Positions 13,065-33,400 of a DNA stretch of 64,000 nucleotides are shown here, piece after piece (within the stretch, counting starts at the first letter, position 1; every line of letters starts with the position of its first letter). The stretch is taken from positions 682,001-746,000 of the forward strand of contig NW_003314308.1 in assembly GCF_000143415.4 (NCBI RefSeq). Reading direction: 5' to 3'. Below the pieces are notes generated by a model, which was given only the letters and a program-made list of their open reading frames with translations, made no database searches and was not told the DNA's origin. This DNA is from Selaginella moellendorffii. Its lineage: Eukaryota; Plantae; Lycopodiophyta. A program made the translations under genes and the position numbers.

Positions 13065-15767
13065 ATGGTGGCTGGGAGGACTTCTTCTTCCGGCATTCCA
13101 TACTGGCCCGTGGACACCGTCCTGAGCATCCAGCTACTGACCCAATTCGTGGATCGGCTGGAGCGGCGATGCAGCAATCGAGCAGCGGAGGAGTCCGTCT
13201 ACGCCAGGCTGATGCGAGCGTGCGGGATCTCGGGAGCCCTCGAACAGGGACGTCGAGTCCACGGTCACGTCCAGCGCCACGCTGACGATCGATCGCTCTT
13301 CTTCGGCAACAGGCTGGTAAACATGTACAGGCGATGCAGCAGCCTGGACGAGGCGAGAAAGGTCTTCGATCGGATGCGCGAGAGGGATGTTGTTTCGTGG
13401 ACCGCGATGATCTCAGCATATGCCCAGACCGGGCATCAGCGACAGGCACTCGATCTCTTCACCGAGATGGCGGGCAGCTCTCTCGACCCAAACCGCGTCA
13501 CCTTTCTCGCTTTGCTCGAAGCCTGCGACTCGCCCGAGTTCCTGGAAGATGGAAAGCAGATCCACGCTCGGGTCTCGGCGCTCCAGCTGCTGGAATCCGA
13601 CGTTCCGGTGGCAAATGCGGTGATGGGGATGTACAGGAAGTGCGAGAGAGCAGATCTAGCGATGGCAGTATTTAGCGAAATGCGTGAGAGGGATTTGATT
13701 TCCTGGAACAACGCTATTGCAGCAAATGCCGAGTCGGGGGATTACACGTTTACGTTGGCGCTGCTCAAGAGCATGCAGCTGGAAGGAATGGCGCCGGACA
13801 AGGTGACCTTTGTGAGCGCGCTCAATGCTTGTATTGGATCGCGCTCGCTAAGCAATGGGCGATTGATCCACGCGCTGGTGCTGGAGCGAGGCATGGAGGG
13901 CGATGTAGTGCTGGGCACCGCGCTGGTGACGATGTATGGGCGATGCGGGTGCCTGGAGAGCGCGCGAGAGATCTTCCACCGCATGCCCGAGAGGAACGTC
14001 GTGTCATGGAACGCGATGGTGGCGTCGTGCACGTTAAACGCCCACTTTGCCGAGGCGATCGAGCTCTTCAAGAGGATGGTGGCGGTGGCGATGGTGGAGC
14101 CGACGCGAGTGAGCTTCATCACCGTCCTCAACGCGGTCACGACCCCGGAGGCGCTGGCGGAGGGGCGGAGGATCCACGCGATGATCCAAGAGCGCCAGCT
14201 TCTTTCCCAGATCGAGGTGGCCAACGCGCTAGTGACGATGTATGGCCGGTGTGGCGGCGTTGGAGACGCCGAGAGAGTCTTCTCCGCGATGGAGAGGCGA
14301 GACCTCGTGTCCTGGAACGCGATGATCTCGGCCTATGCCCAGTCAGGCCTCGCTCGCGAGGTGGTGAATCTCTTCCATAGAATGCGAGCCGAGCGTGTTC
14401 CTCCCGATCGCATCACCTTCCTCATGGCTCTGGACGCCTGCGCCGAGATACGCGATCTGGATTCCGGAAGAACAGTCCACCACCTTAGCGTCGAGAGTGG
14501 ATTTGGATCGTGCATCTCCGTCGCGAACGCCACCATGCATCTCTACTCGAGCTGTTCTTCTTCCTCGAGTTCTTCTTCGTCGCTCATGGAGGTGGTGGCC
14601 GGGATCTTCGAGAGCATGGCCGCCCGCGACGTGATCTCCTGGAACACGATGATCACTGGCTACGTCCAGGCCGGCGATTCATTCTCGGCTCTCTCCATCT
14701 TCAAGCGCATGCTCCTCGAGGGGATCCGCGGGAACCAGGTGACTTTCATGTCCCTCCTCAGCGTCTGTGACTCGCGAGCTTTTCTTCGACAGGGAGAGAC
14801 AATCCACCGCCGCGTCATCAATCAAACGCCGGAGCTCTCCTCGGATCCCATCGTCGCCGCGGCCATCGTCAACATGTATGGCAAATGCGGCGAGCTCGAC
14901 ACTGCTCGCCATCTCTTCGAGGATACGAGCCACCGGAACTTGGCGTCGTGGAACTCGATGATCTCGGCCTACGCTCTCCACGGACGAGCCGAGCAGGCGT
15001 TTGATCTCTCGGAGCGGATGCGCAGGGAGGGAGTTCTTCCGGACCGAGTGACTTTCATCACGCTGCTCAATGCCTGCGTCGCCGGAGGAGCTGTCCGCCA
15101 TGGAAAGATGATCCACGCCCGGATCATCGACAGTGGGCTGGAGAAGGACACGGTGGTGGCGAACGCGCTCGTCAACTTCTACTCCAAGTGTGGGAACTTG
15201 GACACCGCCACCTCGCTGTTTGGAGCTCTGGATTACCGCGACGTCGTGTCCTGGAACGGGATCATCGCTGGCTTTGCACACAACGGCCACGCTCGCGAGG
15301 CTCTCAAGTCGATGTGGCTGATGCAGCAGGACGGCGTGAGGCCGGACGCCATAACTTTCCTCACCATCCTCTCCGCCAGCAGCCATGCCGGCTTCCTCCG
15401 CCAAGGTGGTGACGACTTTGTGTCCATGGCCGTGGATCACGAGCTGGAGCGAGGCGTCGAGCACTACGGCTGCATGATCGACTTGCTGGGACGAGCCGGG
15501 AGGATTGGCGATGCCGAATACTTTGTGAGCGCGATGCGGGACGAGGACAAGGAGGTGTCGTGGATGACGCTGCTGTCGGCATGTGAGGTGCACGGGGACG
15601 AGGAGCGGGCCAAAAGAGTTGCCGGGAGCATTGTGGAGATGAATCCGCAGCACTCGAGCGCCTATGTGGCTCTCTCCAACTTGTACGCGACTTGTGGTGA
15701 CGGGAGCTTTCGCTTCAAGAGGCCCAGGCTCAAGAAAAGCTTGCTCGCTAAGTCGAGTTCTGGATAA
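13065..15767 (+). CDS. PLS-class pentatricopeptide repeat protein with E domain, no DYW domain (900 aa)
   Basis: Repeated P/L/S motifs (NALVTMYGRCG..A..VF..M..RD.VSWNAMI). E domain HYGCMIDLLGRAG...WMTLLSACEVHGD...AYVALSNLYA. Confidence 0.95.
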   Translation: MVAGRTSSSGIPYWPVDTVLSIQLLTQFVDRLERRCSNRAAEESVYARLMRACGISGALEQGRRVHGHVQRHADDRSLFFGNRLVNMYRRCSSLDEARKVFDRMRERDVVSWTAMISAYAQTGHQRQALDLFTEMAGSSLDPNRVTFLALLEACDSPEFLEDGKQIHARVSALQLLESDVPVANAVMGMYRKCERADLAMAVFSEMRERDLISWNNAIAANAESGDYTFTLALLKSMQLEGMAPDKVTFVSALNACIGSRSLSNGRLIHALVLERGMEGDVVLGTALVTMYGRCGCLESAREIFHRMPERNVVSWNAMVASCTLNAHFAEAIELFKRMVAVAMVEPTRVSFITVLNAVTTPEALAEGRRIHAMIQERQLLSQIEVANALVTMYGRCGGVGDAERVFSAMERRDLVSWNAMISAYAQSGLAREVVNLFHRMRAERVPPDRITFLMALDACAEIRDLDSGRTVHHLSVESGFGSCISVANATMHLYSSCSSSSSSSSSLMEVVAGIFESMAARDVISWNTMITGYVQAGDSFSALSIFKRMLLEGIRGNQVTFMSLLSVCDSRAFLRQGETIHRRVINQTPELSSDPIVAAAIVNMYGKCGELDTARHLFEDTSHRNLASWNSMISAYALHGRAEQAFDLSERMRREGVLPDRVTFITLLNACVAGGAVRHGKMIHARIIDSGLEKDTVVANALVNFYSKCGNLDTATSLFGALDYRDVVSWNGIIAGFAHNGHAREALKSMWLMQQDGVRPDAITFLTILSASSHAGFLRQGGDDFVSMAVDHELERGVEHYGCMIDLLGRAGRIGDAEYFVSAMRDEDKEVSWMTLLSACEVHGDEERAKRVAGSIVEMNPQHSSAYVALSNLYATCGDGSFRFKRPRLKKSLLAKSSSG

Positions 15768-15953
15768 CTTACTTCGATCTAGGAGTAGACACACAGTGAA
15801 AACATGACAAAGGAAATGTAAATTACGATTGCTTTCCTGATAACAAAGACGCTGACATATGCTCGACATATCCTATATCCTGGAATGAAGAGAAGGATTG
15901 TCAGTATGATCTCGAGCAAAAAGATATAGTAGACTTCCTACCTCCTGAGTCAG

Positions 15954-18900
15954 CTACATGAGAGATGCCACTTTTGGACGTAGACTCTTTGCAAGGTCTT
16001 CGAAGCTCCTCGAGAGCTGGATCTCGTCAATGCTCACTTGAAACATGCCGTCGCCAGCATCAGCCATGTCGGTGAGAAGTTTCTTCGCGGAATTGGTCGG
16101 ATCGGTCGCAAACATGATGGTGTGAAAGATGAGACTCTGTTCCAGCTTCTTGAGTTGGTTCACGCAGTGCACGGGATCCAAACCTCCATAGTTGTCACCA
16201 TCGCTCAGAAACACCACTGCGGGACTCTTGCCGGCCACTGCTGGATCACTGACCGAGCGAACTAGAATCTCTTCAACGCGAGCAATCCCGGACGAGTAAA
16301 CAGTTCCCCCGGCGTCTTCAAAAGTGAGAAGCTTGTCCACCTGAGGCTCGGACATGTGCTCCCGCTCCATCGCGATCTGTCCGTGGTCGTCAAAGAGAAC
16401 CACTGACATTACGTCTTGAAGGTTGGCGGCTATGCGGGTCCGAATGAAACGAACCATGGCCTCGAAGACGCAGCCGAGACGGTTCTCCGGGAACTTGACC
16501 ATCTTCGGTTTAATGTCCGGCGATCCCATGGATCCTGATCGATCCACCACAAAAATGACATGGCTGGACACGTCTTTGGAGTGGTTGCACGCAAACTTGT
16601 GTCCGTCTTCAGTCACGTAGCCTGTATAAGAGATTTCTTTGGGCACTGGATCGTGCCACAGCTTCTCAATGCAATACGATTTTCCTGCAGCCTGGAAAGT
16701 ACTGCCACCTGCAAAGAAAAAAAAAAAGAGAGTCATGCGAACTAAGAGCTTCGAAACGTAGATTACCTGAGCTGCTACCGCTGCCGTTGTGTTCTATAGA
16801 TTGGCAGCAGTGGCCGCAGAGAGCAAACTGCCTCTGGTCGTCTTCCGAGCAGGGATCCTTAAATTTCATATTCTTCCAGTACGTTGCATGTGTGAGCTCG
16901 TCTTTTGGAGTGTCGAAGTCTGGACCATATCTCACAGTCGCGTGACGAGCTCCTTCCAAAAATTTTACCTTGCCGCAGACACCGTCGTCCTTCTGGTCCT
17001 TCTCGCAAACAGCCAGGTGGATATGTCCACGGCCTCTAGCTTTGCAGTGCATCATGCACATCTCAGCCGCACCAGACTCTCCCCACTCGTACTTCCGCCC
17101 CTCGATCTCGACTTCCTCACTTTCGGCTACGAAAGTTTGCTGCGTCATGTTGCCGTGAGTTGTATCGTGAAGTCCTGGATGATCGATTGGCAAGTGGCAA
17201 AAGTAGCCACACCCCTGGCATTTCGACTCGCAGAAGTGGACGGCATCCGGATTGACGGTGTGCAAATGCTGGCCTGGATGCTCCAGCTCAAAAGGTGGTA
17301 TCGGAATGCAGCACAGCTTCTTCTTCCCATTCTGCTCGGAGACGTAGTCGTACTCAAAGGTCGAGCGCTTTCCCTGGAATGTGCGACTCTTCTTTAGAAC
17401 TTCAGTGAGAACCACGCAGTTACCCTTGCATTCACAGTCGTTCGGACACTGGTGCTCGTTCCCGCAGAGATGGACTCTAGCCTTGAGCGAGTGGAAGTGG
17501 TCCTCCATAGCACATTTCCTGTTGCACCCGTCCATGGTACACTCGCTGACGCACATCTTCTCGTGGCAGGTATGAGTGTGGTCGATCACCGCCAGAGGAT
17601 AAACGCAGGTATTTCTACACCCCGGAAGCGAGCAGTCCTCCTTGCACATATGCTGCTTCGAGTTGCAAGTGTGTTCGCCATGGTGTGCGATTTTGAGAGT
17701 GCAAGCCTTGTTGCAGTTGGACGACTTCTCCCAGAGGTGGCACGTCTCTCCACAGGTGTGGCTCTTGAGCTTGCAGTCGTGCAGACCTTCGTGACCAGCC
17801 TTGTCCACGCAGCGCTCCATACTCGAAGCCTCCTCCTTGCAAAACGAGCAGTACTCCTTGCAGCGATGGCTACCTTTGCAGCTGTGATGACCCGGATGTG
17901 CCTTCTCCAAGATGCAACGAAGAAAGCACTGCCCACACTTGCAGCTACACAGCGCCAGTTTGTCTTTCACATCCGCCACTGCCGCTGTAACTTCCAGAAG
18001 CAGCTTCTGGACATCACCGTCCGATGAGAAGTCACGGGTGTTGGCTTTGATCCAGTTAGCCACTCGAGTCTTGCGTCTCTCTGCTAGAGATCCCAGGAAA
18101 TTCTCCAAGGACGCGTGCCATTCTTCGTCGCTACATAGACTCTCTTCGCGGGGCACCACCTTCTCAAACTCCGGTATCAGCTTCTCCAAAACTGTGTTGG
18201 CGACGTCCATTTCTTCGTATCCGGCAAGCTGAAGACGTGTGTCGAGAACGTCGAACGTGTGACCACTCACGAGAATTGGCTCGTCTTCAAACTTGTCCTC
18301 CGAATCAAAGTCGACCAGCTCTCTTTTCTCGTCGCCTGCGAGACATCCCAGAGCTATGGCTGTCCTCAAGTGCTTCCTCAGCATACTGACTTTGAAGCCG
18401 ATCCTTTTGGTGTCGATAGGAGACCAGTCCTTGGAACAGATCTGTGCTATCACCAGCTTCAAATCTCTCAGGAAACTCTTCCCAGTCTGGTGCACCGCAT
18501 CAAGCCCTTCGACAGTCGCAGCGATCTGCGATATGCTCTCGTGGAATTCCTTCCGGTTGAAAGGTGGCATGGCTGAAATCTCCACAAGACCCCCGTACAT
18601 TCTCGTCAGGAAGTTGTCTTTGGACTTGTTGCAAATGTAGAGGATCTTCGAGTAGAACTCTTCGCGAAGATCGTCAACATCAGCTGCATCTACGTCTTTG
18701 ATGGCCATGTAAAACAGTCCTTTGAAGAGCTTGTCATCGTCTTTCACCAAGCTCACACCGTTTTGGAACCGTTCGAACACGGCCTCCGTTTCCTTGTCAA
18801 GGTGGAAATCCTGGACCAGAAAAACCAACATTTTAGTAACATTGCATTAGCAAACAAATGCAAACTGACCTTCTTGTTGAACAAAGTTATGTTGCTGATG

Positions 18901-21900
18901 GCAGCATTCAGGATGGCCAGCAACATATCCTCCTGCTCACTTCGCTCGAAGCTTCCAAGTCCTTCGAAATCCAGAATAATAAACATGCAGTCCTCACTGG
19001 CCCGGCAAGTCATCCACACGCCATCCGTGCAGCGTCCACCGGCAACGTCAAGGACCGAGCCACTCAGGTGATTCAAGAGGTACGACTTTCCACTGCTCTG
19101 CTTCCCCATCGAGGAGATAACTTTCACAGGCCCCGTCCAGCTTTCGAGAAGAGCATCGTAAACGCTGAACTGAATGATGCCTGCAAGCTGGATAGCGTCT
19201 CCATAGCTCACGTCTGCTGCCATCTCCAGTCCATCGATCAGAGGCCTCAAGTTGTTGTTTTGAGCTCGAGCGATCTGCACCGGAACGAGAGACATCAACT
19301 GACGCAGAAACTCGCTCATGTTCCTGTCCTCTGGCTGCACCAGCATTCCTGAGTCGCTGAAGAACTGCAGATCGAAGAGGATCCTCAGGCCCGAGAAATC
19401 CTTGCCCTTGTCCTTCTCCAGCTGCTGGACGATTCTTTCCGCATGGCTGGTGAGCTTTCTTCTTGCTAACATCGGGTCGCCTCTCAAGACGTCTACCACC
19501 AAAGAAAACCGGAGAATCCTCGAAGAATTAATGAGCGGAGGACTCACTGCATATTTGTCGAAGACATGGTAGATGTAGTCGAGCTCGTGACACATCGATT
19601 CCTCACTTTCTGCTGGTGCCACTTCTGCCTTGGTAAAAGAGTCCCTGACGAGCTGACAGCTTTGGGAGGACACCGTTACTTTCAGACACAGCGACCGCAC
19701 CACATTCATATCCTCTCCATCACTGATTAGCATCTGCATCTGCGTCCCAAAATTCGCCACTGCAAGCTGGAAGTTACTCCCATTCTTGACTGCTACTCCC
19801 AAGTCCACTGCTTTCATGCGTTCCAAACCGTCATCGAGTCTGTAAATTTCAGCTGAAAGTGCCGCTCCAACTTCCGACGGGCCACCACACACTGCGACCA
19901 GGCAGAGGCCATCCGCTGTCAAGCAAGGCCTCAGGAACGAAGTTGGAAGCTGGATGACTCGCGGCTTCATCATTCCTGGTTGTACCGCTTCAAAAACCCG
20001 GACACAGAAGTCCTCGTCCGCCACTAAGAGCTCCTCTCTGCCGGGTATGAACTCCATCCAGGTGATGTTCCTGCTGCCACTGTAGTTGCTGAGTAGAATC
20101 GTGACCCCGTTCCACATCAGCTCGCGGAACGACTCGTCAAACCGGTATACTTTGATCATTGCTCCCGAGACGTCGTATAGAGCGATGAACCTCAAGACCT
20201 CGTCATAAGCAACAAGATCCACGCCCCTGCTAAAAGTCTTGACGCGCATCTTTGAGCTTGGAACGCTCAAGTGTGCTCCCAAACTCGGGCATAAGTATAT
20301 GCTCAGCTGCGAATTCTGGAGTCCTCTGACGAAAACGAGCACCTGTCCAGACTTCAGGAAGACGACTTTAGACAGTCCAAACTCGCTAGCTTCCAAGTCC
20401 ACCACGTCACACCTTTGAGAGCACTTGAGGGTGATAAAGTGCTCGCGGTTTTGCATCTGAACTTCCAGATCTTTCTTTGTAGGCAGCAACTCGACAGCTT
20501 TCCAGGAGACACGCTCATTTTGAGTGATTTCTCTTCTGAAACGAATCTGGACCCGGTCGCTGTAAGCCTCTGAAACGCAAGTGTCCAACAAGACTTTCGG
20601 ACGTGTGTCGTTGGGATCCCACAGTTTCGCTCGAAACTCTGCTACGCATTCGGACTTCTTGGACTTGATAGCTTGCTTCAGTTGCTCCCGTTTCTCCGTC
20701 AACTCAGAAGTGGCCGTTGACTTCAAAAAGCCAAAGAGAACTTCCTCGGAGCCTTCAAAGATACTGCTGAAGAACTTCATCCGACCAGTTCTGTAGACCT
20801 CAGCACACCAAGGAAGTATCTTGTCTTCTGCCTCCAAAACAAATGGTCCAGCTGAAGCCCGTATTTCTTGCCACCTTTCCTCGCATAACCTCGCATTGGA
20901 CGCATACTGGAACTGGTTCTTATCCGCAAGCACGCAATGGAAAAGAACCTCGTCATCTGCTTCTTCGGGAATACCCAGCATGGCTTTGTGAGAGATCACA
21001 AAGTCCGCAAGCACAACTTTCCCCTCCAGAGCCACCACCTCCTTGGCGAACGAATCTATCCATGAGTGAATCCCGGAATCGACCTTGGTGAAGCCAACAT
21101 CGTAGATTGTCGACCCTCTCCAGTTTAATATCCCAACTATGACGGCCAGCGTAAATCTGTCGTTCGTGAACACTGGACCGGTTCTGCGACTAGAAGAAAG
21201 TTTGAAGGTGGCAGTGGAGTTTTTCTCATTAACCGCAGAAAGCATGTCACCATACCGCACCGGACCTGACTTTCTCGTATCAGCGGACAGAATGGTGTAG
21301 GAGCCACCAAAAATGTCAAAGGTAACTCTCGAGCCGATGAACACGATTGAACCTCTGTGACTGTTGAGCACGCTGGCCAGCCTCGACTCCAAAGTCTCCA
21401 CAGCCTTGGTGTCCAAATCTCGAGTCGACTTGCCTGGCTTATCACAGTATTCCAGAAACTCTAGAATACTTGCACCACTCAGCTGACATGGTGAAACTTC
21501 CCCATGGACTTTCGAGTAGGCCATCTCCTCCCAGGGAAAATGGAGCCTCAGGTAAGCCTTCAACCCCTCGGCCAAAGTTTGTAGCACAGATATCTTCCTC
21601 ACGGTTAGGTAGTCTTCCGTGTTGGAGAGTTTTCTGGACTCCACGTCCATGGATCTATCGAGCGCACGGAGACTGTCGGACAAAGTGTCAAAACCATTCA
21701 GCTTCGCTGCGTTTGCAAAGAGAAGAAAGCCGATTTCGCTCAGCTTACTGAGGTCGAGGCAGAGATCTTTCCACTCCGCCATCTTTTCAGGCACGTATGA
21801 TCGAGAAACTGTCCATTCTCCAGACACAAGCTTCGTTTCCGGAGTGTACTTCTCGGGAACAAGCAACGCGCAGCGATGAAAGCCTTCACTCCACATTGAA

Positions 21901-22643
21901 CAGTATCCAGACGCCACAGGTGGGAGACCTTTCAGGCGCAGCTCAAAGCCTGGTAGCACCCCAAAGTCATTCTCCGACGAGTTCACGACCGATATCTGCA
22001 GCCTCTGGATCCGATTCTTTTTCGCCGCCACCCTCACCACTGAAGAAACATTCGCACCGCCATCTTCAACTTCCATGCAGCAGTAGACCGCGTCGCAAAG
22101 GTCCAAGAGGTAGCGTATGAAGTTGCAAGAGATGTCACCCCGTCGTGCAGCCGAGAACTTCTTATCCGGATGCCAGTAGAAGAGCACAAGCTTCTTCTCC
22201 TCGAACAGAGCTCCGTAAAGTCCAGGCAGAAGGGAGTCCTCTCGAAGCTGTGTCACCGTCTCTTCCGGAAGTTGGCCGTGCTGCAGTAGAACTTTGGCCA
22301 GAATGCGTTTGCTCCCGTAGAGCCCCACCGTGGCTAGAACGGAGCTGTCCAGCCGAGAGAGATCCAAGATCCAGCGGCCGCTAGATGTTGACTTAACCGA
22401 GCCTGGCGCCACAGCGTTGAAGAAGGCAAAGATGTCCTCTCGATTGATTAGCACCTTTTCGACGAAGCTCAAGTCTTGCTTGTCCGACTTTACCCCGATC
22501 AAGTTGAAAAGAGCGTTCGCTGGAGGTGATACCTGGACGACTTCCATCGGATCGCCAAGAACAGGAGGTATTTCATTGTCGACGTAGTCGCGCTCAGGAT
22601 TCGCGTCCACCACCTCGAAATCGTCAGCCGCGCCTCCTCCCAT
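15954..22643 (-). CDS. ~2190-aa protein: long N-terminal region, very-large/GBP-atlastin-superfamily GTPase domain, Cys/His-rich (NF-X1-like) repeats and C-terminal vWA domain
   Basis: Exons 22643-18870, 18810-16767 and 16708-15954 total 6573 nt in frame; introns are 59 and 58 nt GT-AG. G1 GKQSSGKS, G2 RCTDGVW, G3 LDFEGLGS, putative G4 IKD. vWA MIDAS DRSGS...GGT...LSDG. Confidence 0.88.
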
Positions 22644-23089: not shown

Positions 23090-24895
23090 ATGAACTTGGC
23101 TTCCGTTGTTTTCCACAGCAAAGATCAATCGACGACTGCTTCTCTGAACAAGCAGATTGAAATGTATGGGCGATGCGGGGACCTCGCACACGCGAGACAA
23201 ATCTTCCATGCAATTGCCCACAAGGACGATTTCTCGTGGGTGATGATGTTCCATGCCTTGTCTCGAAATGGCTGTCTTATAGACGCTAAGAATCTATTTG
23301 ACTCCATTCCAGAAGAAAACTGCACTGTCGTCGCTTGGAATTCGATGCTCTCGACATATGCCCGTAACGGGCATCTGGATCAGGCAAAAGCTCTCTTTGA
23401 CCAAATGCCGGCGTGGGATATAATCTCGTGGAATACAATCCTCTCATTGTTTTCCACAATTGAGGAGTGCTTCGATAAAGCCAAAAAATGTTTTGACGAG
23501 ATGGGCGAGCGGGATCTTGTCTCCTGGACTGTGATGCTCAACGCAAATGCCAAGCACGGGCATTTGGAGGATACGGAGAAGCTGTTCTTTCAGATGCCAC
23601 AGAGGAATCTCGTGTCGTGGACGGTGATGCTCGTGGCATACTCCGAGAATGCAATTGTGTCTTTTGCAAAGAGTTTCTTTGATGGAATGCCACAGCACGA
23701 CGAGATCGCATGGAGCGCCTTGGTAGCAGTGTATGCCCGAGCTGGGGATTTTGTTCGCGCCAAGCAATCTCTGGATGCAATGCCCTGTGTCACAACCACG
23801 GCACTCAACGCGATCTTGAGCTCGGGAAGCCTGGAGCTCGCGAGATCCTTGTTTGATGCCATGCCTGGCTGGGATCTAGCGTCCCTGAACGCGATGCTCG
23901 CGGCTCTAGCGCGCGGTGGAGCGATCGACGAGGCACAGAGCTTCTTCTCGCGGATGCCGCAGATCAATCTCGTCTCCTGCACGATTTTGATAGCCAGCTT
24001 CGCCGAGATTGGAGATCTGGACAGGGCGGCGTGGATCTTTCACGAGAGGATGCCGCGGCACGACACCATCGCATGGAACACGATGCTCAGTGCGTTCGCT
24101 TTGAACGGGTATATGGAAGAAGCAAAGGAAATGTTTGATCGATGCCCGTACGCTAGAGATCTCTTCTCGTACAACACTGTTCTTGCGGGAATTGCAACCG
24201 ATATTGTGCTGTGTGAGATATTCTTTTCTAGAATGCCCAGATGTGATCTCGTGTCCTGGAATACACTTCTGTCAGCATATGCCGAATGTGGGCATCTTTG
24301 TTCTTGTCAATCTGTCTTTGAGGCTATGCCTGAGAAGGATCAAGTCTCGTGGAACACAATGCTAGGAGCTATCTTGCAAATTGGAGACTTGACAATATCA
24401 AAGTCTTTCTTCTTTCAAATGCCTCTTAAGAACACTTTCTCCTGGAATTCTTTAATCTCAGCATTTGCTCTCAACGGGGATCTTGAACGAGCTAAGACCC
24501 TTTTCGATCAAATGCCGCTGGGCAGCGATCAGGCGTCCTTGAGTGGCTACCTTGCAGGAACTGCCAGATCAAAGCTCTTCAATCCTTCCACCTTTGAGAT
24601 CTTCCACAGCGTCGCACTGGTGCACGGAGAGATCAACGAGGACTCCTCGCATTTCTTCGAGTCAGCGCTCATCACTTGCAGCCGGAGCGGTAAGATCTCC
24701 ACTGCACGAAGATGGTTCCTCTCGATGATCGTGGATCACGGCACAAGACCCTGCAAGCATCACTACTGCTGCATGGTCGATCTTCTCGCGAGAAGCCAGT
24801 GCCTCGCGACCTTAGCAGAGAACCTTGTCCTCAACATGCCATTTCAGCCGGATTGCATGGAGTGGACGTGCTTGCATGGAGTGGAAGTTCAGTGA
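23090..24895 (+). CDS. PLS-class PPR protein made largely of short ~31-aa repeats, truncated E domain (601 aa)
   Basis: Tandem A..LFDQMP..D.VSWN.ML.A repeats; ends HYCCMVDLLAR...MPFQPDCMEW. Confidence 0.88.
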   Translation: MNLASVVFHSKDQSTTASLNKQIEMYGRCGDLAHARQIFHAIAHKDDFSWVMMFHALSRNGCLIDAKNLFDSIPEENCTVVAWNSMLSTYARNGHLDQAKALFDQMPAWDIISWNTILSLFSTIEECFDKAKKCFDEMGERDLVSWTVMLNANAKHGHLEDTEKLFFQMPQRNLVSWTVMLVAYSENAIVSFAKSFFDGMPQHDEIAWSALVAVYARAGDFVRAKQSLDAMPCVTTTALNAILSSGSLELARSLFDAMPGWDLASLNAMLAALARGGAIDEAQSFFSRMPQINLVSCTILIASFAEIGDLDRAAWIFHERMPRHDTIAWNTMLSAFALNGYMEEAKEMFDRCPYARDLFSYNTVLAGIATDIVLCEIFFSRMPRCDLVSWNTLLSAYAECGHLCSCQSVFEAMPEKDQVSWNTMLGAILQIGDLTISKSFFFQMPLKNTFSWNSLISAFALNGDLERAKTLFDQMPLGSDQASLSGYLAGTARSKLFNPSTFEIFHSVALVHGEINEDSSHFFESALITCSRSGKISTARRWFLSMIVDHGTRPCKHHYCCMVDLLARSQCLATLAENLVLNMPFQPDCMEWTCLHGVEVQ

Positions 24896-25474: not shown

Positions 25475-27865
25475 TCAAAACGCCGCTGCTGTTGCTGCTG
25501 ATCCGTGCTGGAACCCCGGCGGAAGAACATCCTCGTCGCCTACCGGGAACGGCAGGTCCGGAGACGCTGGCAGTGGCATATCATCGCTCCCGACCAGCAG
25601 GAGCTTCCCAGCCGTGGTAGTACTCGCCTCCGCGGCCTCCTCCTCCTCCGGAGGGAGCTGCTGCCTCAAGATTCCCCTCACATGAGATTGCCTAAACCAC
25701 TTGACGAAGAAGGAGCCCCGGCACCAAAATGACCCGAGGTCCTCGTCCTGGAAGATAAACGGCGAGTCCAGCGGCTTCATCATCGCCTCGATAGCTTGCC
25801 TGACGGCGATGGCGTCTGAGTCCGCCTTGCTCCCTGTTAGAATCTTGATCCTCTGAGGAACGAACCTGCGCTTGAGTATCCTCTCCCGGAACTTCTCCAG
25901 CGTGCACAGCACCCCGATGAGCGCCGCTCCGATGGACATGCTCCTCACCTTGAGGCACCACGTCAAGTCTCCCTGGAGGACGATGGAGTTCGGGTACATG
26001 TGAATCTGATAGACCACCTTCCAGAAGCTGCGAGCTTTCCTCTCCTGCCCCATCACCACCAGATAGTTGAGCAGCACGTTGGTGAGGTAGCGTCGCGTCT
26101 TGAAATCCACCTCGGCTTCCAGCTCCGAGTAGAACGACTTGATGTAGTCGGCCAGACTCTGGCCATTGCGGTGCTTGCTGCTTCCCATGAGCCCGCACAG
26201 AAAGCTGTGCGCCGGATGCTTCGTCTCTCGCATGAAGCTCATGACCACTTCTTCGTGCTCCAGCCTCGAACCACGCAGAAAAAACTCGAGCAGCATGCAG
26301 TACGTCCTCAAGTCCACTGCCGAGCCCGGCCTTTGCATAAAGGAGAGCATCTGCCTCGCATGCTCCATGTCGCCACAGCTGAGAAAACCGTGGAGGATCT
26401 CCCGGCAGAGGCTGACGTGAGGAGTAAATCCATGTCCCGTGACCTTGAGAAAGAGCTCCCAGGCATCGGAGATTCTCTTGTCGTCCACCAGCTTGACGAT
26501 GCTATCGTTGACAGCGTCCGCGACGTTAAGTCCCATCTCTTGCATCTCAAATAGGATCCTCTCGACGTCGTCATACTTTCCACCCTTGGCTACGGCTCCA
26601 ACCACGATCCGGCAAGTAAAATGCGACGGCCTCAGTCCAACCCCACGCATCTCCCTGTAGAGCCTCACCGCAGTCTCGGCCTTTCCCGCTTGAGCGTGCT
26701 GCTCAATCAGAACCGCAAAGATGAGCGGCGGAAGCCACAGTCCCACGCCCCGCATCCTCTCGTAAAACTCTAGAGCCGCGTCCAGCATCCCCGCCTTTGC
26801 ATGAGCATCCACCAGAGCAGCGTAGATACACAGATTGGGCTTGTAGTTGAAAGCCTCCATGTCCTTGAAAAACTTGAGCCCCGTCTCCAGCCTGCCCGAC
26901 TTGCAGTAAGCCTCGATGAGCGAAGCAAAAGTTCCCAGAAGTGGTCGAATCTCCAAGCTCCGCATCTCCTCAAAGTACTTGGTCCCGATCTCCAGCCTTC
27001 CCGACTTCAGCTGTCCCGCAATGAGAGCCGAGTAAGCCACAGCATTCGGCTGATGCCCCTCGGCCTTCATCCTCTCGAAGAGCATGCAAGCCAGGTCGAG
27101 CCTTCCAACTTTCCCGGCGTGAGGCACCACCACCTCGTACCCGACCCTGTCCAGCGAGCAGCCAATCTTTTGCATCTCATCGTAGACCTCGAGCACCTTC
27201 TCGGACTGCCCCGCGTACGAGTAGAGGCTCATGAGTGTGTTGAAAGTGAAGATATCTGGGACACACCTCGAGTCTTGCATCTCCTTGTAGTATCCCCAGG
27301 CCTCGTCCAGCTTGTGAGCTTTCCCATAGACTTTGATGAGAGTGTTGTAAGCCACCGTGGTCATGGGACACTTATCCGCCTTGAGGTCGGACAGCACCCT
27401 CTGGACGGCCTGGAAATCCTTTCCTCGTCCATAGGTGTTGAGAAGGATGGAGAACGAATACGTGCTTGGGACGTACCACTTTTGCCTGCGAATCCATTGG
27501 AAGAATCCATTGGCGACGTCGGGCTCCTGGATGTTCTTGAGGACCTCGTTGATGTGAAACTCCGAGGGCCTGATGTCCAGGAGCTGGAGCTCCCTCTCCA
27601 CTTCTGGGGACCAGTATGGCCGCCTCACAACGTAGAGAATCTTGGAGATCAAGTCGGCGTTGCTGAGGCCGATCTCTCCCAGCTTGCTGGGGCGGAAGAA
27701 AGCCGGATCATCGTCCGCGCGCAGCAAGAAGCTCGGGAGCTCCTCCTTGTAGAAGAATCTCACGGGCGCCCAGATCACCCTAGAAGAGGCCTCTTGCCTG
27801 GCCGCATTCGCCTGGAGGAGCAGGGACGATGCTAACCTGGAGAGCGGCCGGCGGAGGGCGAGCAT
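25475..27865 (-). CDS. P-class PPR protein with C-terminal Smr domain and organellar targeting peptide (796 aa)
   Basis: Arg/Leu/Ser-rich N-terminus; about 10 P repeats; Smr-like WCLKVRSMSIGAAL...VPQRIKILTG...LDSPF. Confidence 0.92.
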   Translation of the reverse strand: MLALRRPLSRLASSLLLQANAARQEASSRVIWAPVRFFYKEELPSFLLRADDDPAFFRPSKLGEIGLSNADLISKILYVVRRPYWSPEVERELQLLDIRPSEFHINEVLKNIQEPDVANGFFQWIRRQKWYVPSTYSFSILLNTYGRGKDFQAVQRVLSDLKADKCPMTTVAYNTLIKVYGKAHKLDEAWGYYKEMQDSRCVPDIFTFNTLMSLYSYAGQSEKVLEVYDEMQKIGCSLDRVGYEVVVPHAGKVGRLDLACMLFERMKAEGHQPNAVAYSALIAGQLKSGRLEIGTKYFEEMRSLEIRPLLGTFASLIEAYCKSGRLETGLKFFKDMEAFNYKPNLCIYAALVDAHAKAGMLDAALEFYERMRGVGLWLPPLIFAVLIEQHAQAGKAETAVRLYREMRGVGLRPSHFTCRIVVGAVAKGGKYDDVERILFEMQEMGLNVADAVNDSIVKLVDDKRISDAWELFLKVTGHGFTPHVSLCREILHGFLSCGDMEHARQMLSFMQRPGSAVDLRTYCMLLEFFLRGSRLEHEEVVMSFMRETKHPAHSFLCGLMGSSKHRNGQSLADYIKSFYSELEAEVDFKTRRYLTNVLLNYLVVMGQERKARSFWKVVYQIHMYPNSIVLQGDLTWCLKVRSMSIGAALIGVLCTLEKFRERILKRRFVPQRIKILTGSKADSDAIAVRQAIEAMMKPLDSPFIFQDEDLGSFWCRGSFFVKWFRQSHVRGILRQQLPPEEEEAAEASTTTAGKLLLVGSDDMPLPASPDLPFPVGDEDVLPPGFQHGSAATAAAF

Positions 27866-28151: not shown

Positions 28152-29809
28152 ATGGCGCTCACGGGCGTGAAGATCGGCGATGAGGTCTGGAGGAGCTGCC
28201 TCACACACGCGCTATCGACGGAGACGGAGGAGGTGATGGGGCTGCTTCTCGGCGACATCAAAGAGGTGAAATTCTCCCCATTCACAATCTCCAGGAGCTG
28301 GATCGACATTTCTTCCATGATCCATCCAGGACAAGAGCAAAGGCACGGTGGATGCTCTCGTCTGGGGCGCTGTGCCGCAAGCTCGCTCCGATCGACGCAA
28401 GGATCGCGTGGAGACTACTCCGGAGCACCATGGCTCTGGCTGAGATATCCTCAAGGACATTATTTTCTTTCAGTTTGGTGTTTTTTCCTTCACTCTGGAA
28501 GCACAGATTATCTAGGACGATTGGAAACACGACCAGAGTTATTGGCTGGTATCATTCACATCCGCACATCACTGTTCTTCCTTCTCATGTTGGTGAGTTT
28601 CATCTCCTTCCTGCGTATGAGAAAAAAAAAAAAGAAGTTTTCGTTCTTCGTTGTTGGTGTAGATCTTCGAACACAGCAGTCTTTCCAGATGCTGGATCCT
28701 GGGTTCATTGGAGTCATATTTTCCTGCTTCGACGACGACGCAAACATGGTATCATCTTCTTTTGCTTTGCTCCTTTTCCTCATATCAGTTCTAACAGGTC
28801 GGTCGAGTTCAATCCATAGCATTTCAATCTACCAATGGTCGCCAAAGGAAGGTTTCGGGATCTTTTCAGAGTTCATCCGCTCAGCACTCCAGTTTTGGTT
28901 TTGGTTCCAACGGGGAACGGTCTTCCGTGGATGAAGCCTCCTCGTCTCTCTCGGTACTTGAGCATTTGTTGAAAGGGTCACAACTCTTTTCTTTTTTCTT
29001 CTTACAGACAGTTGTGGACATCAACTATACTCGTAGGATATCGGATTCGTCAAGCAATGAAATCGAGCAGCGGCTTTCGCCAGGCATCGAAGAAGCAATG
29101 CATCTTTCAAGTCTTGACATGAGGTAAATACCATTCTGCTCGTTCTGAAATTTTCCTACGTAAAACAGTTCCGGAGACTTTTCACGAAAGGAGATCCCAA
29201 TGCAAGTAGTTCCTGTGTCCACATTCAACCTCGCCAATCCTCCTCCCGATCCTCTGCTTTCTTTGCAGCAGACAGTGTTTAACGAAGAAAAGGCTGCGTT
29301 TGAGAAAGCGATGCATCAAAGCAAACAGTTAAGTCATTCCTGCTCAACTTCTTGACAAGTTGTTTCTCTCTTTCTTTCTTCTTGGTTCTCTAGGGGGCAG
29401 CGAATCCATCCTTTGGCAGCTTCACACCACTGCGTGACACACCAGGCGTCCCTTTTGAAACTTATGGAACTCTGGTACTCGCAGTTTTTCTGTTTCCTTT
29501 TACACTCTTCATTCGGGTTCTTTCTCTAGCCTTGTGCCTGCAATGACGACGCTGTGGGACAACCTCCAGCAGAACAAAGCGCAGGTGAAAAATCTGTCTG
29601 GATCTTGTTCAGAGCGTGCGAAGTATTAAGTTTGCTCGTTTCCTGTGCAGATTGCGCTACTGCATCAGGAAGAAGCAGCGCTTGGCCTTAGATTCGATCG
29701 GCAGGCAGCCAGGAAACAAGCCGGACACGATGGCACGCGATGGAACTCAGAGCGTACTCAGCAAAGAATTCCCGATTCTGATCAACGTGTCCGAGGAAAC
29801 ACCGTATGA
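28152..29809 (+). CDS. BRCC36: BRCC36-like JAMM/MPN+ K63 deubiquitinase; frameshifted in exon 2 as written
   Basis: CLTHALSTETEEVMGLLLGDI, RSDRRKDRVE, VIGWYHSHPHITVLPSHVDLRTQ (JAMM HxH..D) and FIGVIFSCF. The reading frame breaks at about 28426-28443. Predicted stop 29807-29809. Confidence 0.85.
28445..28504 (+). other. U12-type AT-AC intron (60 nt) in the BRCC36 gene
   Basis: 5' ATATCCTC, branch TTCCTTCAC at 28485-28493 and 3' AC at 28503-28504. Removal joins LAE to RLSRTIGNTTRVIGWYH in frame. Confidence 0.85.
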
Positions 29810-30475: not shown

Positions 30476-33400
30476 CTAGTATTTGCCCAGCCAATGCTGG
30501 GCAAAGCCTCTCAAACTCACAAATATCTTTGTGACCGAATTTGCTCACATTTCACAATTTCCTTGTGAGATGATTCCTCCATCTTTAGCACTGGTCCATT
30601 GCTATCCATTGGGCCATAGAGAAAGTTAAAACATAAACAAAGTTTATTATAATTTGTTTTTATGTTTTAAGGTGTAGTAGGACAGGAGTTAGTTAATATA
30701 AAGCTTCTTTATATACAATATTGATGGTGAATATTGATGAATTGAATGGAATTAAGCAACCTTGTGTGAGTTGTGTCAATTTGAATTGCAAGTTGTTGTG
30801 GTGATGTGCATCTTGAGAGTGCAACATAAAGCTGCCCATGGCATAATCCAATTATTGGAGACATATTTCTCAGAAGAATAATTATACAACCTTCTTTTAG
30901 TATTAATTTATGTGGTGGTAGTCCAGAGGGAGTAATAGAGTTTAGAAATTCAATTGGGAAATCTTCAAGGTGTTCAACATCAACAAAGTCAATGCTAATA
31001 TAAATTTGAGGTGGACCTGGTAATTGAGAGATGATGTTGTTGTTAATTGGAAATGTATCATCATTGAGAGGTGTTAAAATGGCTCTATTTGCTGCAATTT
31101 GAACATTTGAAATGTCTTCGATACATGGGAATACGAAATTAGTAATAAAGGTACTTTTAATTAGTTCTAAAGGAAAAAGGATAAAATCAAGTGGTAAAAT
31201 AGGGTTTTGTGTGTAATTATTTCCATCACTAACTTTCAATAGCTATTCTGCCCAGTTTGGGAACTTGGGGCCAAGTTGCATATTTGTTTGCAATTAGAAC
31301 TTTCTAAATAGATTTCATAGACTATTCATTCTTATAGATGTGGAAACAATTTATGCTTAATGACTGTGTGGGACAATTGGTAATGTTTGACAGAAGTCAC
31401 CACTTATAACAATAACAATGCCATCGAATGGAGAATTGTTTCATTTCAAGTTTCGTAAGTAGCGGTCAATAGCTGAAAAGGCAAGTGTATGAACCATATT
31501 AATTTCATCCCAAATAAGCACTTGTATTGCTTTCATAAATCTGCTGGCACTATTATTAGGTGTTAAACCAGAAACAGATGTATCATTAATTAGAATTGGT
31601 AACTTAAAGGTTGCATGGGACATTTGTCCATTGTGTAGTAATATGCAATGCCATACAAACCATTTTTTTATTGTAGAACTCAAAATACTTTACCATTGTA
31701 CTTAATAAATATGTTTTGTCAATACCGCTAGGGCTATCAATAAAATAAAATGGTTGGTATTGGTCGGGCACTTGACAATGGTAACAATTTAATTAAATAT
31801 AGCTAATTGTTCAACATTCAAGTTTCTAATATGATGGTAAATTTTTATATATAAATGGTTGTAGTTTAATATTGGTTGAATAAAGGTATTTAGGATTGGG
31901 ATAGGTAAGTTGTATAATTGATTTGTTTTACCATGTATTTTCATTCTTGACTTAATGTCTATTAGAGCAAGTTTATATTGGCATACAATATTTATTCTCC
32001 CAAAATCTTCAGAGAGCTGATCCTTAAAAATATCCCAAAGATATAATGGGTCTTGTGAATTGCAAAAAATATATATGAAAGTAAAAAGTTGACGCAATTG
32101 TGTAGGCATTTGAAAATTGCATGATTCTTGTAAACAGTTACCACTCATTATCATCATCAAGAAGACCCATAGCAATAGCAGCTTGTTAAAAGCTTTAGTA
32201 AGCTATATCATTAACTATTTTAATATTGTCGAAGGATGTCGCACCTCTTTTATGAAGAAGAATATTACATAAGTGGTACAACTCGATATTTAGAGGAGAT
32301 ACTGAGTATAGTCGAGGAATAACCTTTTTTTTTCTCAACATTGCCATACATTAGCAGATTTATTGAAAACATAATGTAAAGGTATTTTAACAAAGGTATA
32401 TTGTCTTGCATTCGGATAATGAATAATGAGTTCGAACCATTTTGTTAACATTGTTCTATTATGTGCTGCTCTTTGCAAGGCATTGTGCTCTAAGCCTTCT
32501 GTAAAAAATACATATTTTAGAAGTCAGGAAGATGTACGGGTAGACGTATTATAGGGTGTGAACGTTCATGTATTTTAAATCTAAATATCCTCCAAATAAC
32601 TTCCGATGCTGAAATGTATCGGGTATTTATAAAATTTGTGATTTCATCACAATTTAATACGTTTCCAGATTGAGTAGCTGTTTGGATTTCAATGGTTGCA
32701 CAATCATATCCTTTATAAATATATTGAAAAAGATACTTAATACTTTTATTTGATGCACATATTTCTACATTTATATGGGCTTTGTATTTTTTACATAAAT
32801 ATTTATTATATAGGACAATCCATCTGTTATCAATTGGAACATCATTTTTAAGGAAGGTATTGTTTGGCTTAAAATATTCTGGGTACCCATCGACACAATA
32901 TGTAGTTCCGTCATTGAAGTTTTTGGGATAGTTTTTGGAGCATTTTTTGTTTTCCATACATGGACTTTGAGGATTTAGTAATCCACATGGACTATGTATC
33001 ATATGTGATGTGATTATTTCAAATAATTCGGGTTTTGATAAAAGGTCAAGTAATTGAGCAAATACATATTGGTCAATAGTGTCACGGTCTTTAATTTTAC
33101 TTTCATTGTATAATATGCCTAGAAAATGACAATGTGGCAAACCTTTTTTTTGGAACTCAATGACACATATAAATGCAATAGATCTTCCAAAGATATTATT
33201 TTGTGTAATATCATGAAGAAAATATTTTAGCTTCATGTTAAAAACCCTAGCAACTAAATCAGGTCGGTGTTCAGGTCCTTCATTAGGGTGCAAATTTTGT
33301 AATATTTGAAGCCATTTAAGGTTGCAAATGAAAGTTATGAAAATATCAGGTTTTGAGTATTTTGTTACAATTGCCATAGCATCTTGGTAATTTTGTTGCA

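What the first reader, a model, noticed from the sequence alone, without database searches (positions are those of the whole stretch)
15954..22643. Intact ~2190-aa very-large GTPase with Cys/His zinc-finger array and vWA domain: candidate non-seed-plant immune effector
Seen: three ORFs join through two short introns into one uninterrupted gene. It has a ~1200-aa N-terminus including a beta-rich, propeller-like stretch; a P-loop GTPase (GKQSSGKS / RCTDGVW / DFEGLGS); about 350 aa of C-x3-C...H-x3-H-x-C repeats; and a vWA domain with an intact MIDAS. Known: this G-domain signature belongs to the GBP/atlastin/very-large inducible GTPase (GVIN) superfamily, used in animal cell-autonomous immunity, and NF-X1-type fingers occur in antiviral ZNFX1-type proteins. 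Inference: a pathogen-sensing or membrane-attacking GTPase unlike familiar angiosperm defence proteins, possibly patchily distributed and shared with fungi or protists.
Basis: partly seen in the sequence, partly recalled or inferred. Interest (0 to 1): 0.75.

Follow-up and report, generated by a model that had tools for sequence, protein, structure and literature searches.

The report
Giant two-GTPase-domain zinc-vWA gene, spikemoss
This is an intact spikemoss gene for a 2,190-residue soluble GTPase from an old, unstudied protein family found in mosses, ferns, conifers, fungi and water moulds but not found in flowering plants; it may act in cell defence, but nobody has tested that.

Summary
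Three minus-strand ORFs (22643-15954) join through two GT-AG introns of 59 and 58 nt into one 2,190-codon frame, and the junctions abut exactly in homologues. The protein has no transmembrane segment.

Predicted parts, in order:
- an N-terminal domain with a GBP/Sey1-like GTPase fold but no P-loop (a dead copy), which appears to carry a large nested insert that includes a beta-propeller;
- a live GBP/Sey1/VLIG-class G domain;
- a helical stalk;
- a ~390-residue Cys/His module, with 65 Cys/His conserved family-wide;
- a vWA domain with an intact MIDAS.

The whole layout is shared with land plants (liverworts, mosses, ferns and many conifer copies), fungi, oomycetes and other protists. The tree follows the species tree. 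No flowering-plant member was found.

"Non-seed-plant" is wrong, because gymnosperms have it. The NF-X1 finger assignment is not supported. The immune role is untested.

The scan has reported this family three times already in this genome, on other DNA, including what looks like this same 2,190-aa gene (s1-402675). I found no paper on the family.

The parts
15954..22643 (-). Whole gene: 3 exons, 2190 codons plus stop
18870..22643 (-). Exon 1 (aa 1-1258)
   Evidence: ORF with no stops. The ATG is preceded by an in-frame stop 9 codons upstream. Aligns from residue 1 with paralogue P0001.
18811..18869 (-). Intron 1: 59 nt, GT..AG, phase 0
   Evidence: Homologues are continuous across the junction.
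16767..18810 (-). Exon 2 (aa 1259-1939 plus the first base of codon 1940)
16709..16766 (-). Intron 2: 58 nt, GTAAT..T-rich tract..AG, phase 1
15954..16708 (-). Exon 3 (aa 1940-2190 plus stop)
22029..22514 (-). Dead G domain, N-terminal part (aa ~44-205). GBP/Sey1-like fold; a shortened P-loop remnant VGLYGSK; no switch-I Thr; no DxxG.
20604..22028 (-). Nested insert (aa ~206-680): a four-strand unit that seems to join the propeller, helical bundles, a small beta unit, and a 65-residue helix (aa 610-674). This is the fastest-evolving part of the protein.
   Evidence: Secondary structure of the model. Propeller matches start at model residue ~212-254. Identity is 19-27% within plants and within fungi. 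No Pfam hit.
19644..20603 (-). Beta-propeller (aa ~681-1000)
19269..19526 (-). Probable C-terminal part of the dead G domain (aa ~1040-1125). This is inferred from the ranges of the matches.
   Evidence: The Sey1p and GBP1 matches span the model up to residues 1121/1124. Secondary structure is beta-alpha-beta-beta-alpha-beta.
18421..19166 (-). Live G domain (aa ~1160-1388, split by intron 1). G1 GKQSSGKS 1180-1187; G2 T1206; G3 DFEG 1225-1228; G4-like IKD 1295-1297.
   Evidence: Pfam GBP 26.5 bits against a cut-off of 21.1; URGCP 36 against 55; RHD3 36 against 42.4. PDB: GBP1/2/5 and Sey1p. The motifs are near-invariant in the family.
17956..18420 (-). Helical stalk after the G domain (exon-2 aa ~131-285)
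16783..17955 (-). Cys/His-rich module (exon-2 aa ~286-676). It holds 78 Cys/His, of which 65 are conserved in >=90% of the family. The 36-aa unit is H-x3-H-x-C-x4-H-x-C-x3-C-xn-C-x3-C.
   Evidence: pLDDT is mostly 85-93. No Pfam, PDB-sequence or fold match.
16050..16559 (-). vWA domain with intact MIDAS (DRSGS at 16530-16544; GGT; SDG)
   Evidence: Pfam VWA_2 30.4 bits against a cut-off of 27. The family profile hits PDB vWA domains 4rck (1e-9) and ITIH4 (6e-8). MIDAS residues are >=90% conserved.

Best explanation
What it is: an intact nuclear gene of the spikemoss Selaginella moellendorffii. It encodes a 2,190-residue soluble member of an old, unstudied eukaryotic family of giant GTPases. 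The family belongs to the GBP / atlastin-Sey1-RHD3 / VLIG branch of the dynamin superfamily.

Shown or predicted here: a dead GBP-like G domain that seems to carry a nested insert (helical units plus a beta-propeller); a live G domain with all nucleotide-binding motifs; a helical stalk; a module with about 65 conserved Cys/His (enough for up to ~16 zinc sites); and a vWA domain with an intact metal site.

How it probably works (inferred): as in GBPs, atlastins and Sey1p, GTP binding drives pairing of G domains and moves the stalk. Here the dead G domain in the same chain may act as a built-in partner or lock for the live one. The propeller and the fast-evolving insert may bind a ligand that releases the lock. 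The zinc module and the vWA MIDAS site may then hold partner proteins in a larger assembly.

Likely role (weakest step): a part in cell-autonomous defence or stress is the most attractive reading, and it is untested.
For: Gene model.

Live G domain: Pfam GBP is above its cut-off. The family profile hits GBP1 (3e-8), Sey1p (6e-9 to 2e-7) and GBP2/5. G1-G4 are near-invariant.

Propeller. vWA and MIDAS. No transmembrane segment.

Family: the same layout, end to end, occurs in plants, Agaricomycetes, Glomeromycota, a chytrid, oomycetes, a dinoflagellate and unclassified protists.

Consistent with defence:
- Lineage-specific duplications, with neighbouring locus tags in Cryptomeria (SUGI_0690960 to 0691520, and 0197900/0197940) and Ceratopteris (35G015200/35G015400), and at least 3 paralogues in Selaginella.
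- The insert and propeller evolve much faster than the G, zinc and vWA parts.
- The nearest studied relatives, GBP1 and GVIN1, coat intracellular bacteria (bioRxiv 10.1101/2025.03.24.645074).
Against: - There are no expression, localisation or phenotype data for any member, and I found no paper.
- The tree follows the species tree. The layout has been kept since before plants and fungi split, and copy number is low in bryophytes and Selaginella. All of this fits a conserved cellular job just as well.
- The dead G domain rests on one AlphaFold model (pTM 0.46) and whole-model alignments. Profile-profile comparison with the live G domain is negative.
- The nested topology is read from alignment ranges only.
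- Zinc binding is inferred from conservation alone.
- No hit to known prokaryotic defence models.
Confidence: 0.6

Rival explanations
1. A housekeeping GTPase for a conserved cell-biological job, such as tethering or shaping organelles, or assembling large complexes, in the manner of Sey1p/RHD3/atlastin. It would have become dispensable in flowering plants and some other lineages. It would not be an immune protein.
For: - The tree matches the species tree, with single well-supported plant, fungal and oomycete clades.
- The full layout is conserved across kingdoms.
- The G domain is 69-79% identical within plants and within fungi.
- The P-loop GxQSxGKS and the stalk look most like Sey1p.
- Bryophytes and Selaginella have only 1-3 copies.
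Against: - It has no transmembrane hairpin or other anchor, unlike Sey1p/RHD3/atlastin.
- Tandem-looking expansions occur in conifers and ferns.
- Wholesale loss in flowering plants is unusual for a core function.
Confidence: 0.3
2. A nucleic-acid-directed or ubiquitin-linked regulator. The large Cys/His module would work like the NF-X1/ZNFX1 fingers or like a RING-type ligase (compare RNF112, a GBP-like GTPase with a RING finger). The GTPase would gate that activity.
For: - The repeated H-x-C-x3-C core recalls NF-X1 fingers.
- A weak Foldseek row for RNF112 appears among the G-domain matches.
- vWA plus zinc fingers occur together in TFIIH p44/Ssl1 (my own knowledge, not tested here).
Against: - Pfam gave no zf-NF-X1, RING or other zinc-finger hit even at E<=10.
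- The NF-X1 pattern fails.
- The module has no fold match.
- No helicase or nuclease domain is present.
Confidence: 0.08
3. A decaying or untranscribed gene copy whose long open frame is a leftover.
For: - No public protein model for this locus turned up in three searches.
Against: - The frame has 2,190 codons without a stop, with clean GT-AG introns.
- All G motifs, 65 Cys/His and the MIDAS residues are kept.
- The terminal branch is shorter than that of its paralogue (0.29 against 0.43).
Confidence: 0.02

Closest known systems
Human GVIN1 / vertebrate VLIG and URGCP giant GTPases
   Same: Very large (>2000 aa) soluble proteins with a central GBP-like G domain and a P-loop of the QSxGKS kind. 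Pfam URGCP_GTPase is a joint top hit, tied with RHD3_GTPase. UniProt names two family members 'VLIG-type G domain'. GVIN1 forms a coat on cytosolic bacteria (bioRxiv 10.1101/2025.03.24.645074).
   Different: The score stays below the Pfam cut-off (36-39 bits against 55), and only the P-loop-to-G3 part of the model matches. The Cys/His module, the vWA domain, the propeller and the dead G domain are, to my knowledge, not features of GVIN1/URGCP. I did not test that here.
Guanylate-binding proteins (GBP1/2/5; plant GBPLs)
   Same: The G domain passes the Pfam GBP cut-off. These are the best PDB sequence hits. The dead domain also superposes on the GBP1 G domain.
   Different: The P-loop has Ser where GBP1/2 have the catalytic Arg (GKQSSGKS against GLYRTGKS). 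There is no C-terminal CaaX box. The protein is about four times longer and has four extra modules.
Sey1p / RHD3 / atlastin membrane-fusion GTPases
   Different: No transmembrane hairpins. Pfam RHD3_GTPase is below its cut-off (36 against 42.4).
NF-X1 / ZNFX1 zinc fingers
   Same: A tandem Cys/His unit with an H-x-C-x3-C core.
   Different: No Pfam zf-NF-X1 match, and the consensus pattern does not fit. No helicase domain.
Sensor-switch-effector NTPases with propellers (APAF1, fungal NWD NLR-like proteins)
   Same: In logic only: a propeller joined to a nucleotide switch, with lineage-specific expansions in fungi and plants.
   Different: The switch is a dynamin-superfamily GTPase, not a STAND ATPase. 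No homology was seen.

Membership tests
GBP family (Pfam PF02263) | G-domain profile score at or above the curated cut-off | tested here: met
   26.5 bits against 21.1 on exon 1 alone. Full-length homologues score 22-28 bits.
GBP family (Pfam PF02263) | Arginine finger inside the P-loop (GLYRTGKS) | tested here: not met
   The window has GKQSSGKS and the family consensus is GxQSxGKS. GBP2 is shown alongside.
GBP family (Pfam PF02263) | C-terminal helical domain ending in a CaaX box (GBP1/2/5) | tested here: not met
   The C-terminus is ...KVASLM, after a vWA domain.
VLIG / URGCP giant GTPases (Pfam PF25683) | URGCP_GTPase profile at or above the cut-off of 55 bits | tested here: not met
   36 bits for exon 1, where the domain is split by intron 1. 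Unsplit homologues P0001, P0007, P0014 and P0015 score 31-39 bits. Only profile positions ~186-290 of 396 match.
Sey1p/RHD3 (Pfam PF05879) | RHD3_GTPase profile at or above 42.4 bits | tested here: not met
   36 bits. Homologues score 21-32 bits.
Sey1p/RHD3/atlastin | Transmembrane hairpin anchoring the protein in the ER | tested here: not met
   The highest 19-residue Kyte-Doolittle mean is 1.49, and it lies in a propeller strand.
Dynamin-superfamily GBP-like G domain (general) | G1 GxxxxGKS, switch-I Thr, G3 DxxG, G4 (K/R)D | tested here: met
   GKQSSGKS, RCT(1206)DGVW, D(1225)FEG and IKD (exon-2 aa 37-39) are all >=90% conserved.
vWA domain (Pfam PF13519/PF00092) | Profile above cut-off, and MIDAS DxSxS...T...D | tested here: met
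   VWA_2 30.4 bits against 27. DRSGS, GGT and SDG are present and conserved.
NF-X1-type zinc finger (Pfam PF01422) | Profile match, or the consensus C-x(1-6)-H-x-C-x3-C-[HC]-x(3-4)-[HC]-x(1-10)-C | tested here: not met
   No hit at E<=10. No match to the pattern.
Beta-propeller (WD40/NHL-like fold) | Closed ring of four-stranded blades | tested here: met
Pseudo-GTPase (dead G domain) | G-domain fold with loss of the nucleotide-binding motifs | tested here: inconclusive

The most novel reading that the evidence does not exclude
The family is an ancient eukaryotic cell-autonomous immune machine that flowering plants have lost. A ligand-sensing propeller is nested inside a dead G domain that locks the live G domain. 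Ligand binding frees GTP-driven self-assembly, as in GBP1 and GVIN1 coats. The zinc/vWA end then recruits effectors. That would be a third kind of intracellular immune switch in plants and fungi, beside NLRs and GBPLs.
Probability: 0.2. Interest if true: 0.85.

Novelty: new variant of a known kind. Interest (0 to 1): 0.6.

Why it matters
GBP-type GTPases are central to animal cell-autonomous immunity. In plants, only RHD3 and the small GBPL group are studied.

This family is a large, strongly conserved, unnamed branch of the same superfamily. It has a layout I have not seen described: a dead plus a live G domain, a nested propeller, a very large zinc module and a vWA domain. It is present in most land-plant lineages, many fungi and oomycetes, but was not found in flowering plants. 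That absence may be why it has escaped study.

If it acts in defence, it would show what early land plants and mycorrhizal or wood-rot fungi use beside NLRs. If it is a housekeeping protein, its loss in flowering plants needs explaining.

Tractable hosts exist: family members were found in a moss (Ceratodon), liverworts (Calypogeia, Riccia) and a fern (Ceratopteris).

Tried and rejected
- ESM Atlas look-ups of the N-terminus and of the Cys/His module gave only noise-level scores or nothing.
- Pfam at E<=10 on the Cys/His module and on both halves of the dead G domain gave nothing useful.
- NCBIfam gave only trivial vWA-like hits. PADLOC gave nothing.
- PDB sequence search with exon 2 gave nothing.
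- Foldseek and VIA on the exon-2 model gave no match for the Cys/His module. This was a whole-model search, so a known fold is not excluded.
- hhalign of six N-terminal segments against the live G domain gave probability <1%. The dead-copy reading therefore rests on fold and motif remnants.
- A scan of bacterial and archaeal genomes found nothing. The test was weak, because the patterns came from exon-1 residues while the confirming query was exon 2.
- Six literature searches found no paper on the family or on its locus tags. The fern immune-receptor paper PMC12512272 does not mention it.
- I considered horizontal transfer as the cause of the patchy spread and rejected it, because the tree follows the species tree.

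Not done:
- The big representative search. It is costly tonight and its output carries no taxonomy, so it could not settle absence in flowering plants.
- Any search or fold of the joined three-exon protein.
Full report
OBSERVATION

On the minus strand the window holds three ORFs: 18753-22643, 16666-18831 and 15954-16736 (translations).

Reading the junctions, exon 1 ends at 18870 (...FNKK). A 59-nt intron follows (GTCAGT...CCAG, 18869-18811). Exon 2 starts at 18810 (DFHLDKE...) and ends at 16767 (...SSS plus one base). A 58-nt intron follows (GTAATC...T-rich tract...GCAG, 16766-16709). Exon 3 runs from 16708 to the stop at 15954-15956. The sum is 2,190 codons.

An in-frame stop lies nine codons upstream of the ATG. 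Exons are 52-53% GC and introns 36% GC.

BLASTP of each exon against 70 homologues shows that they run straight across both junctions. For example, Calypogeia P0019 aligns to residue 1453 at the end of exon 1 and to 1454 at the start of exon 2. Ceratodon P0018 gives 1096 and 1097. The first and last residues also align with those of homologues. The gene model is therefore well supported.

Every search and fold used the exons separately by reference, or used natural full-length homologues.

ORGANISM AND SURROUNDINGS

My data fit that:
- The nearest relative in the tree is a Selaginella protein.
- The introns are very short.
- The gene lies between three PPR genes at 13065-15767, 23090-24895 and 25475-27865.

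tblastn finds no second copy in the window.

DOMAINS

(a) Live G domain (aa ~1160-1388, split by intron 1)
- Pfam gives GBP 26.5 bits (cut-off 21.1), URGCP_GTPase 36 bits (cut-off 55) and RHD3_GTPase 36 bits (cut-off 42.4).
- Unsplit homologues give the same picture.
- PDB sequence searches hit only GBP1/2/5 and Sey1p.
- G1 GKQSSGKS, switch-I RCTDGVW, G3 DFEG and an IKD G4 are near-invariant across the family.
- The P-loop lacks the GBP arginine finger and looks most like Sey1p.
- My reading: a functional-looking G domain of the GBP/atlastin-Sey1/VLIG clade, not assignable to one subfamily.

(b) N-terminal 1,160 residues
Pfam, NCBIfam and the Atlas gave nothing here. An AlphaFold model built on a 47-sequence alignment has mean pLDDT 81 and pTM 0.46.
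- Foldseek finds WD40/G-beta propellers (E ~3e-8).
- The region that would be strand 1, P-loop and helix 1 reads VGLYGSKRILAKVLL. The family consensus is VGxYG[SD]K, two residues shorter than a Walker A loop.
- The switch-I and G3 equivalents read PGLY...FYWH/YWPE instead of TxGVW...LDFEG.
- Profile-profile comparison with the live domain is negative.

My reading is a dead G domain. Judging from the alignment ranges and the secondary structure, aa ~44-205 give its first half and aa ~1040-1125 its second half. Everything in between would be a nested insert: a four-strand unit that seems to complete the propeller, helical bundles, a small beta unit, a 65-residue helix, and the propeller at aa ~681-1000. 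The nested topology is an inference. I had no third fold job to test it domain by domain.

(c) Exon 2

Residues ~286-676 hold 44 Cys and 34 His. Of these 78, 65 are Cys/His in at least 90% of 57 family members. That is enough for up to about 16 zinc sites.

Three units with a 36-residue period, plus further degenerate ones, follow H-x3-H-x-C-x4-H-x-C-x3-C-xn-C-x3-C.

Pfam gave no zf-NF-X1 or other finger hit even at E<=10. The NF-X1 consensus pattern does not match. No PDB fold match was seen. The fold search used the whole model, so a known fold is not excluded.

(d) Exon 3
A vWA domain (VWA_2 30.4 bits against 27) with MIDAS DRSGS, GGT and SDG, conserved family-wide.

(e) Membrane anchoring
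There is no transmembrane segment and no CaaX box.

FAMILY AND DISTRIBUTION

Word-index searches of 5.8 billion proteins used three queries: exon 1, the Cys/His-vWA part of the Selaginella paralogue P0001, and exon 2. They found about 90 proteins, all eukaryotic:
- liverworts (Calypogeia, Riccia) and a moss (Ceratodon);
- Selaginella, with P0001 (41-55% identical) and P0074 (53-56% identical to the window and 41% to P0001, so a third paralogue);
- ferns (Ceratopteris with four, Adiantum);
- gymnosperms (Ginkgo, Taxus, and about a dozen Cryptomeria entries, many with neighbouring locus tags);
- Agaricomycetes, Glomeromycota and a chytrid;
- oomycetes, a dinoflagellate and unclassified protists.

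No flowering plant appeared in any length class searched. At the ~50% identity that links mosses to conifers, an angiosperm orthologue should have been found. This is still absence in a protein database, not in genomes.

BLASTP shows the N-terminal dead domain, the propeller, the G domain, the zinc module and the vWA domain in the same order in fungi and plants.

A maximum-likelihood tree on the exon-2 columns (57 rows, quick search, SH-aLRT support) recovers plants (100), fungi (100), oomycetes (99) and the protist group (100). Within plants it gives a bryophyte-lycophyte group (92, below the starred level) and well-supported fern (99) and gymnosperm (100) groups. The window gene is sister to P0001 (99). 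The patchy spread is therefore best explained by vertical descent with losses plus lineage-specific duplication, not by transfer.

Mean pairwise identity within plants and within fungi:

| Part | Identity |
|---|---|
| G domain | 69-79% |
| Zinc module | 56-60% |
| vWA | ~52% |
| Dead G domain | 48-53% |
| Propeller | 38-40% |
| Insert | 19-27% |

The window's own protein was not returned by any of the three searches, so the locus seems to lack a public gene model.

MECHANISM

Established knowledge of GBPs, atlastins and Sey1p says that GTP-dependent pairing of G domains drives hydrolysis and moves the stalk, giving tethering or coat assembly. The live domain here keeps everything needed for that.

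I infer, without proof, three further steps:
1. The dead domain in the same chain is a built-in partner or lock.
2. The propeller and the fast-evolving insert receive a signal.
3. The zinc module and the vWA MIDAS site bind partners.

A defence role is suggested by the duplications, by the uneven rates along the protein, and by the known roles of GBP1 and GVIN1 (bioRxiv 10.1101/2025.03.24.645074). A conserved housekeeping role fits the species-like tree and the deep conservation about as well.

I put about 0.85 on the description of what the protein is. For the role, I give about 0.3 to housekeeping, about 0.1 together to the two minor rivals, and most of the remainder to defence or stress.

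COMPARISON AND NOVELTY

By class of G domain this is a known kind. By layout it differs from GBPs, GVIN/URGCP, Sey1p/RHD3/atlastin and RNF112. I found no paper on it. Public records call its members 'hypothetical' or 'VWFA domain-containing'.

This scan has already reported the family three times in this genome, on other pieces. Those reports include what looks like this same 2,190-aa gene (s1-402675, probably the other haplotype). This report is therefore a confirmation with added structural and phylogenetic detail, not a first sighting.

LIMITS
- Only two fold jobs were available, so the domains were not folded singly.
- There are no expression data.
- The big representative search was not run, because of its cost and because its output has no taxonomy.
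- The prokaryote scan was a weak test.

Noticed in passing
window 22632-22643 (-), first four codons: The N-terminus MGGG is shared by the window protein, its paralogue P0001, Calypogeia P0019, Ginkgo P0027 and two Cryptomeria proteins, although the next ~35 residues are unconserved and predicted disordered. It may be an N-myristoylation site (Gly2), which would give the membrane anchor that the protein otherwise lacks. The generic PROSITE pattern fits the window copy only.
   Followed up: partly
window 15954-22643: None of three protein-database searches returned the window's own product, in any length class from 375 to 3711 aa. The locus therefore seems to have no public gene model.
   Followed up: partly
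P0001 (SELMODRAFT_408444), residues ~1250-1285: The public model of the Selaginella paralogue lacks about 45 residues of the G domain that all other homologues have. A short unrelated stretch stands in their place. This is probably a mis-called intron in the annotation.
   Followed up: no
window 13065-15767 (+), 23090-24895 (+), 25475-27865 (-): Three intronless pentatricopeptide-repeat genes flank the GTPase gene. One has an E motif. The 396-aa antisense ORF at 14679-15869 overlaps the first PPR gene and is probably spurious.
   Followed up: partly
window 32517-33947 (-): An ORF with a Helitron helicase-like N-terminal domain (E 1.6e-51) lies at the start of a long AT-rich stretch (GC 0.30-0.40, ~30-51 kb) that looks rich in transposons.
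   Followed up: no
window 28152-28934 (+): An ORF with a weak, partial JAB/MPN match (23.4 bits, first 40 residues only). It is probably one exon of a spliced gene.
   Followed up: no
Cryptomeria japonica proteins P0004, P0010, P0022, P0023, P0032, P0033 (locus tags SUGI_0690960 to SUGI_0691520) and P0020/P0029 (SUGI_0197900/0197940): Family members carry locus tags within a span of about 57 genes on one 863-Mb chromosome record, and a second pair lies four genes apart on another record. These look like tandem arrays. I judged this from names and contig lengths only.
   Followed up: no
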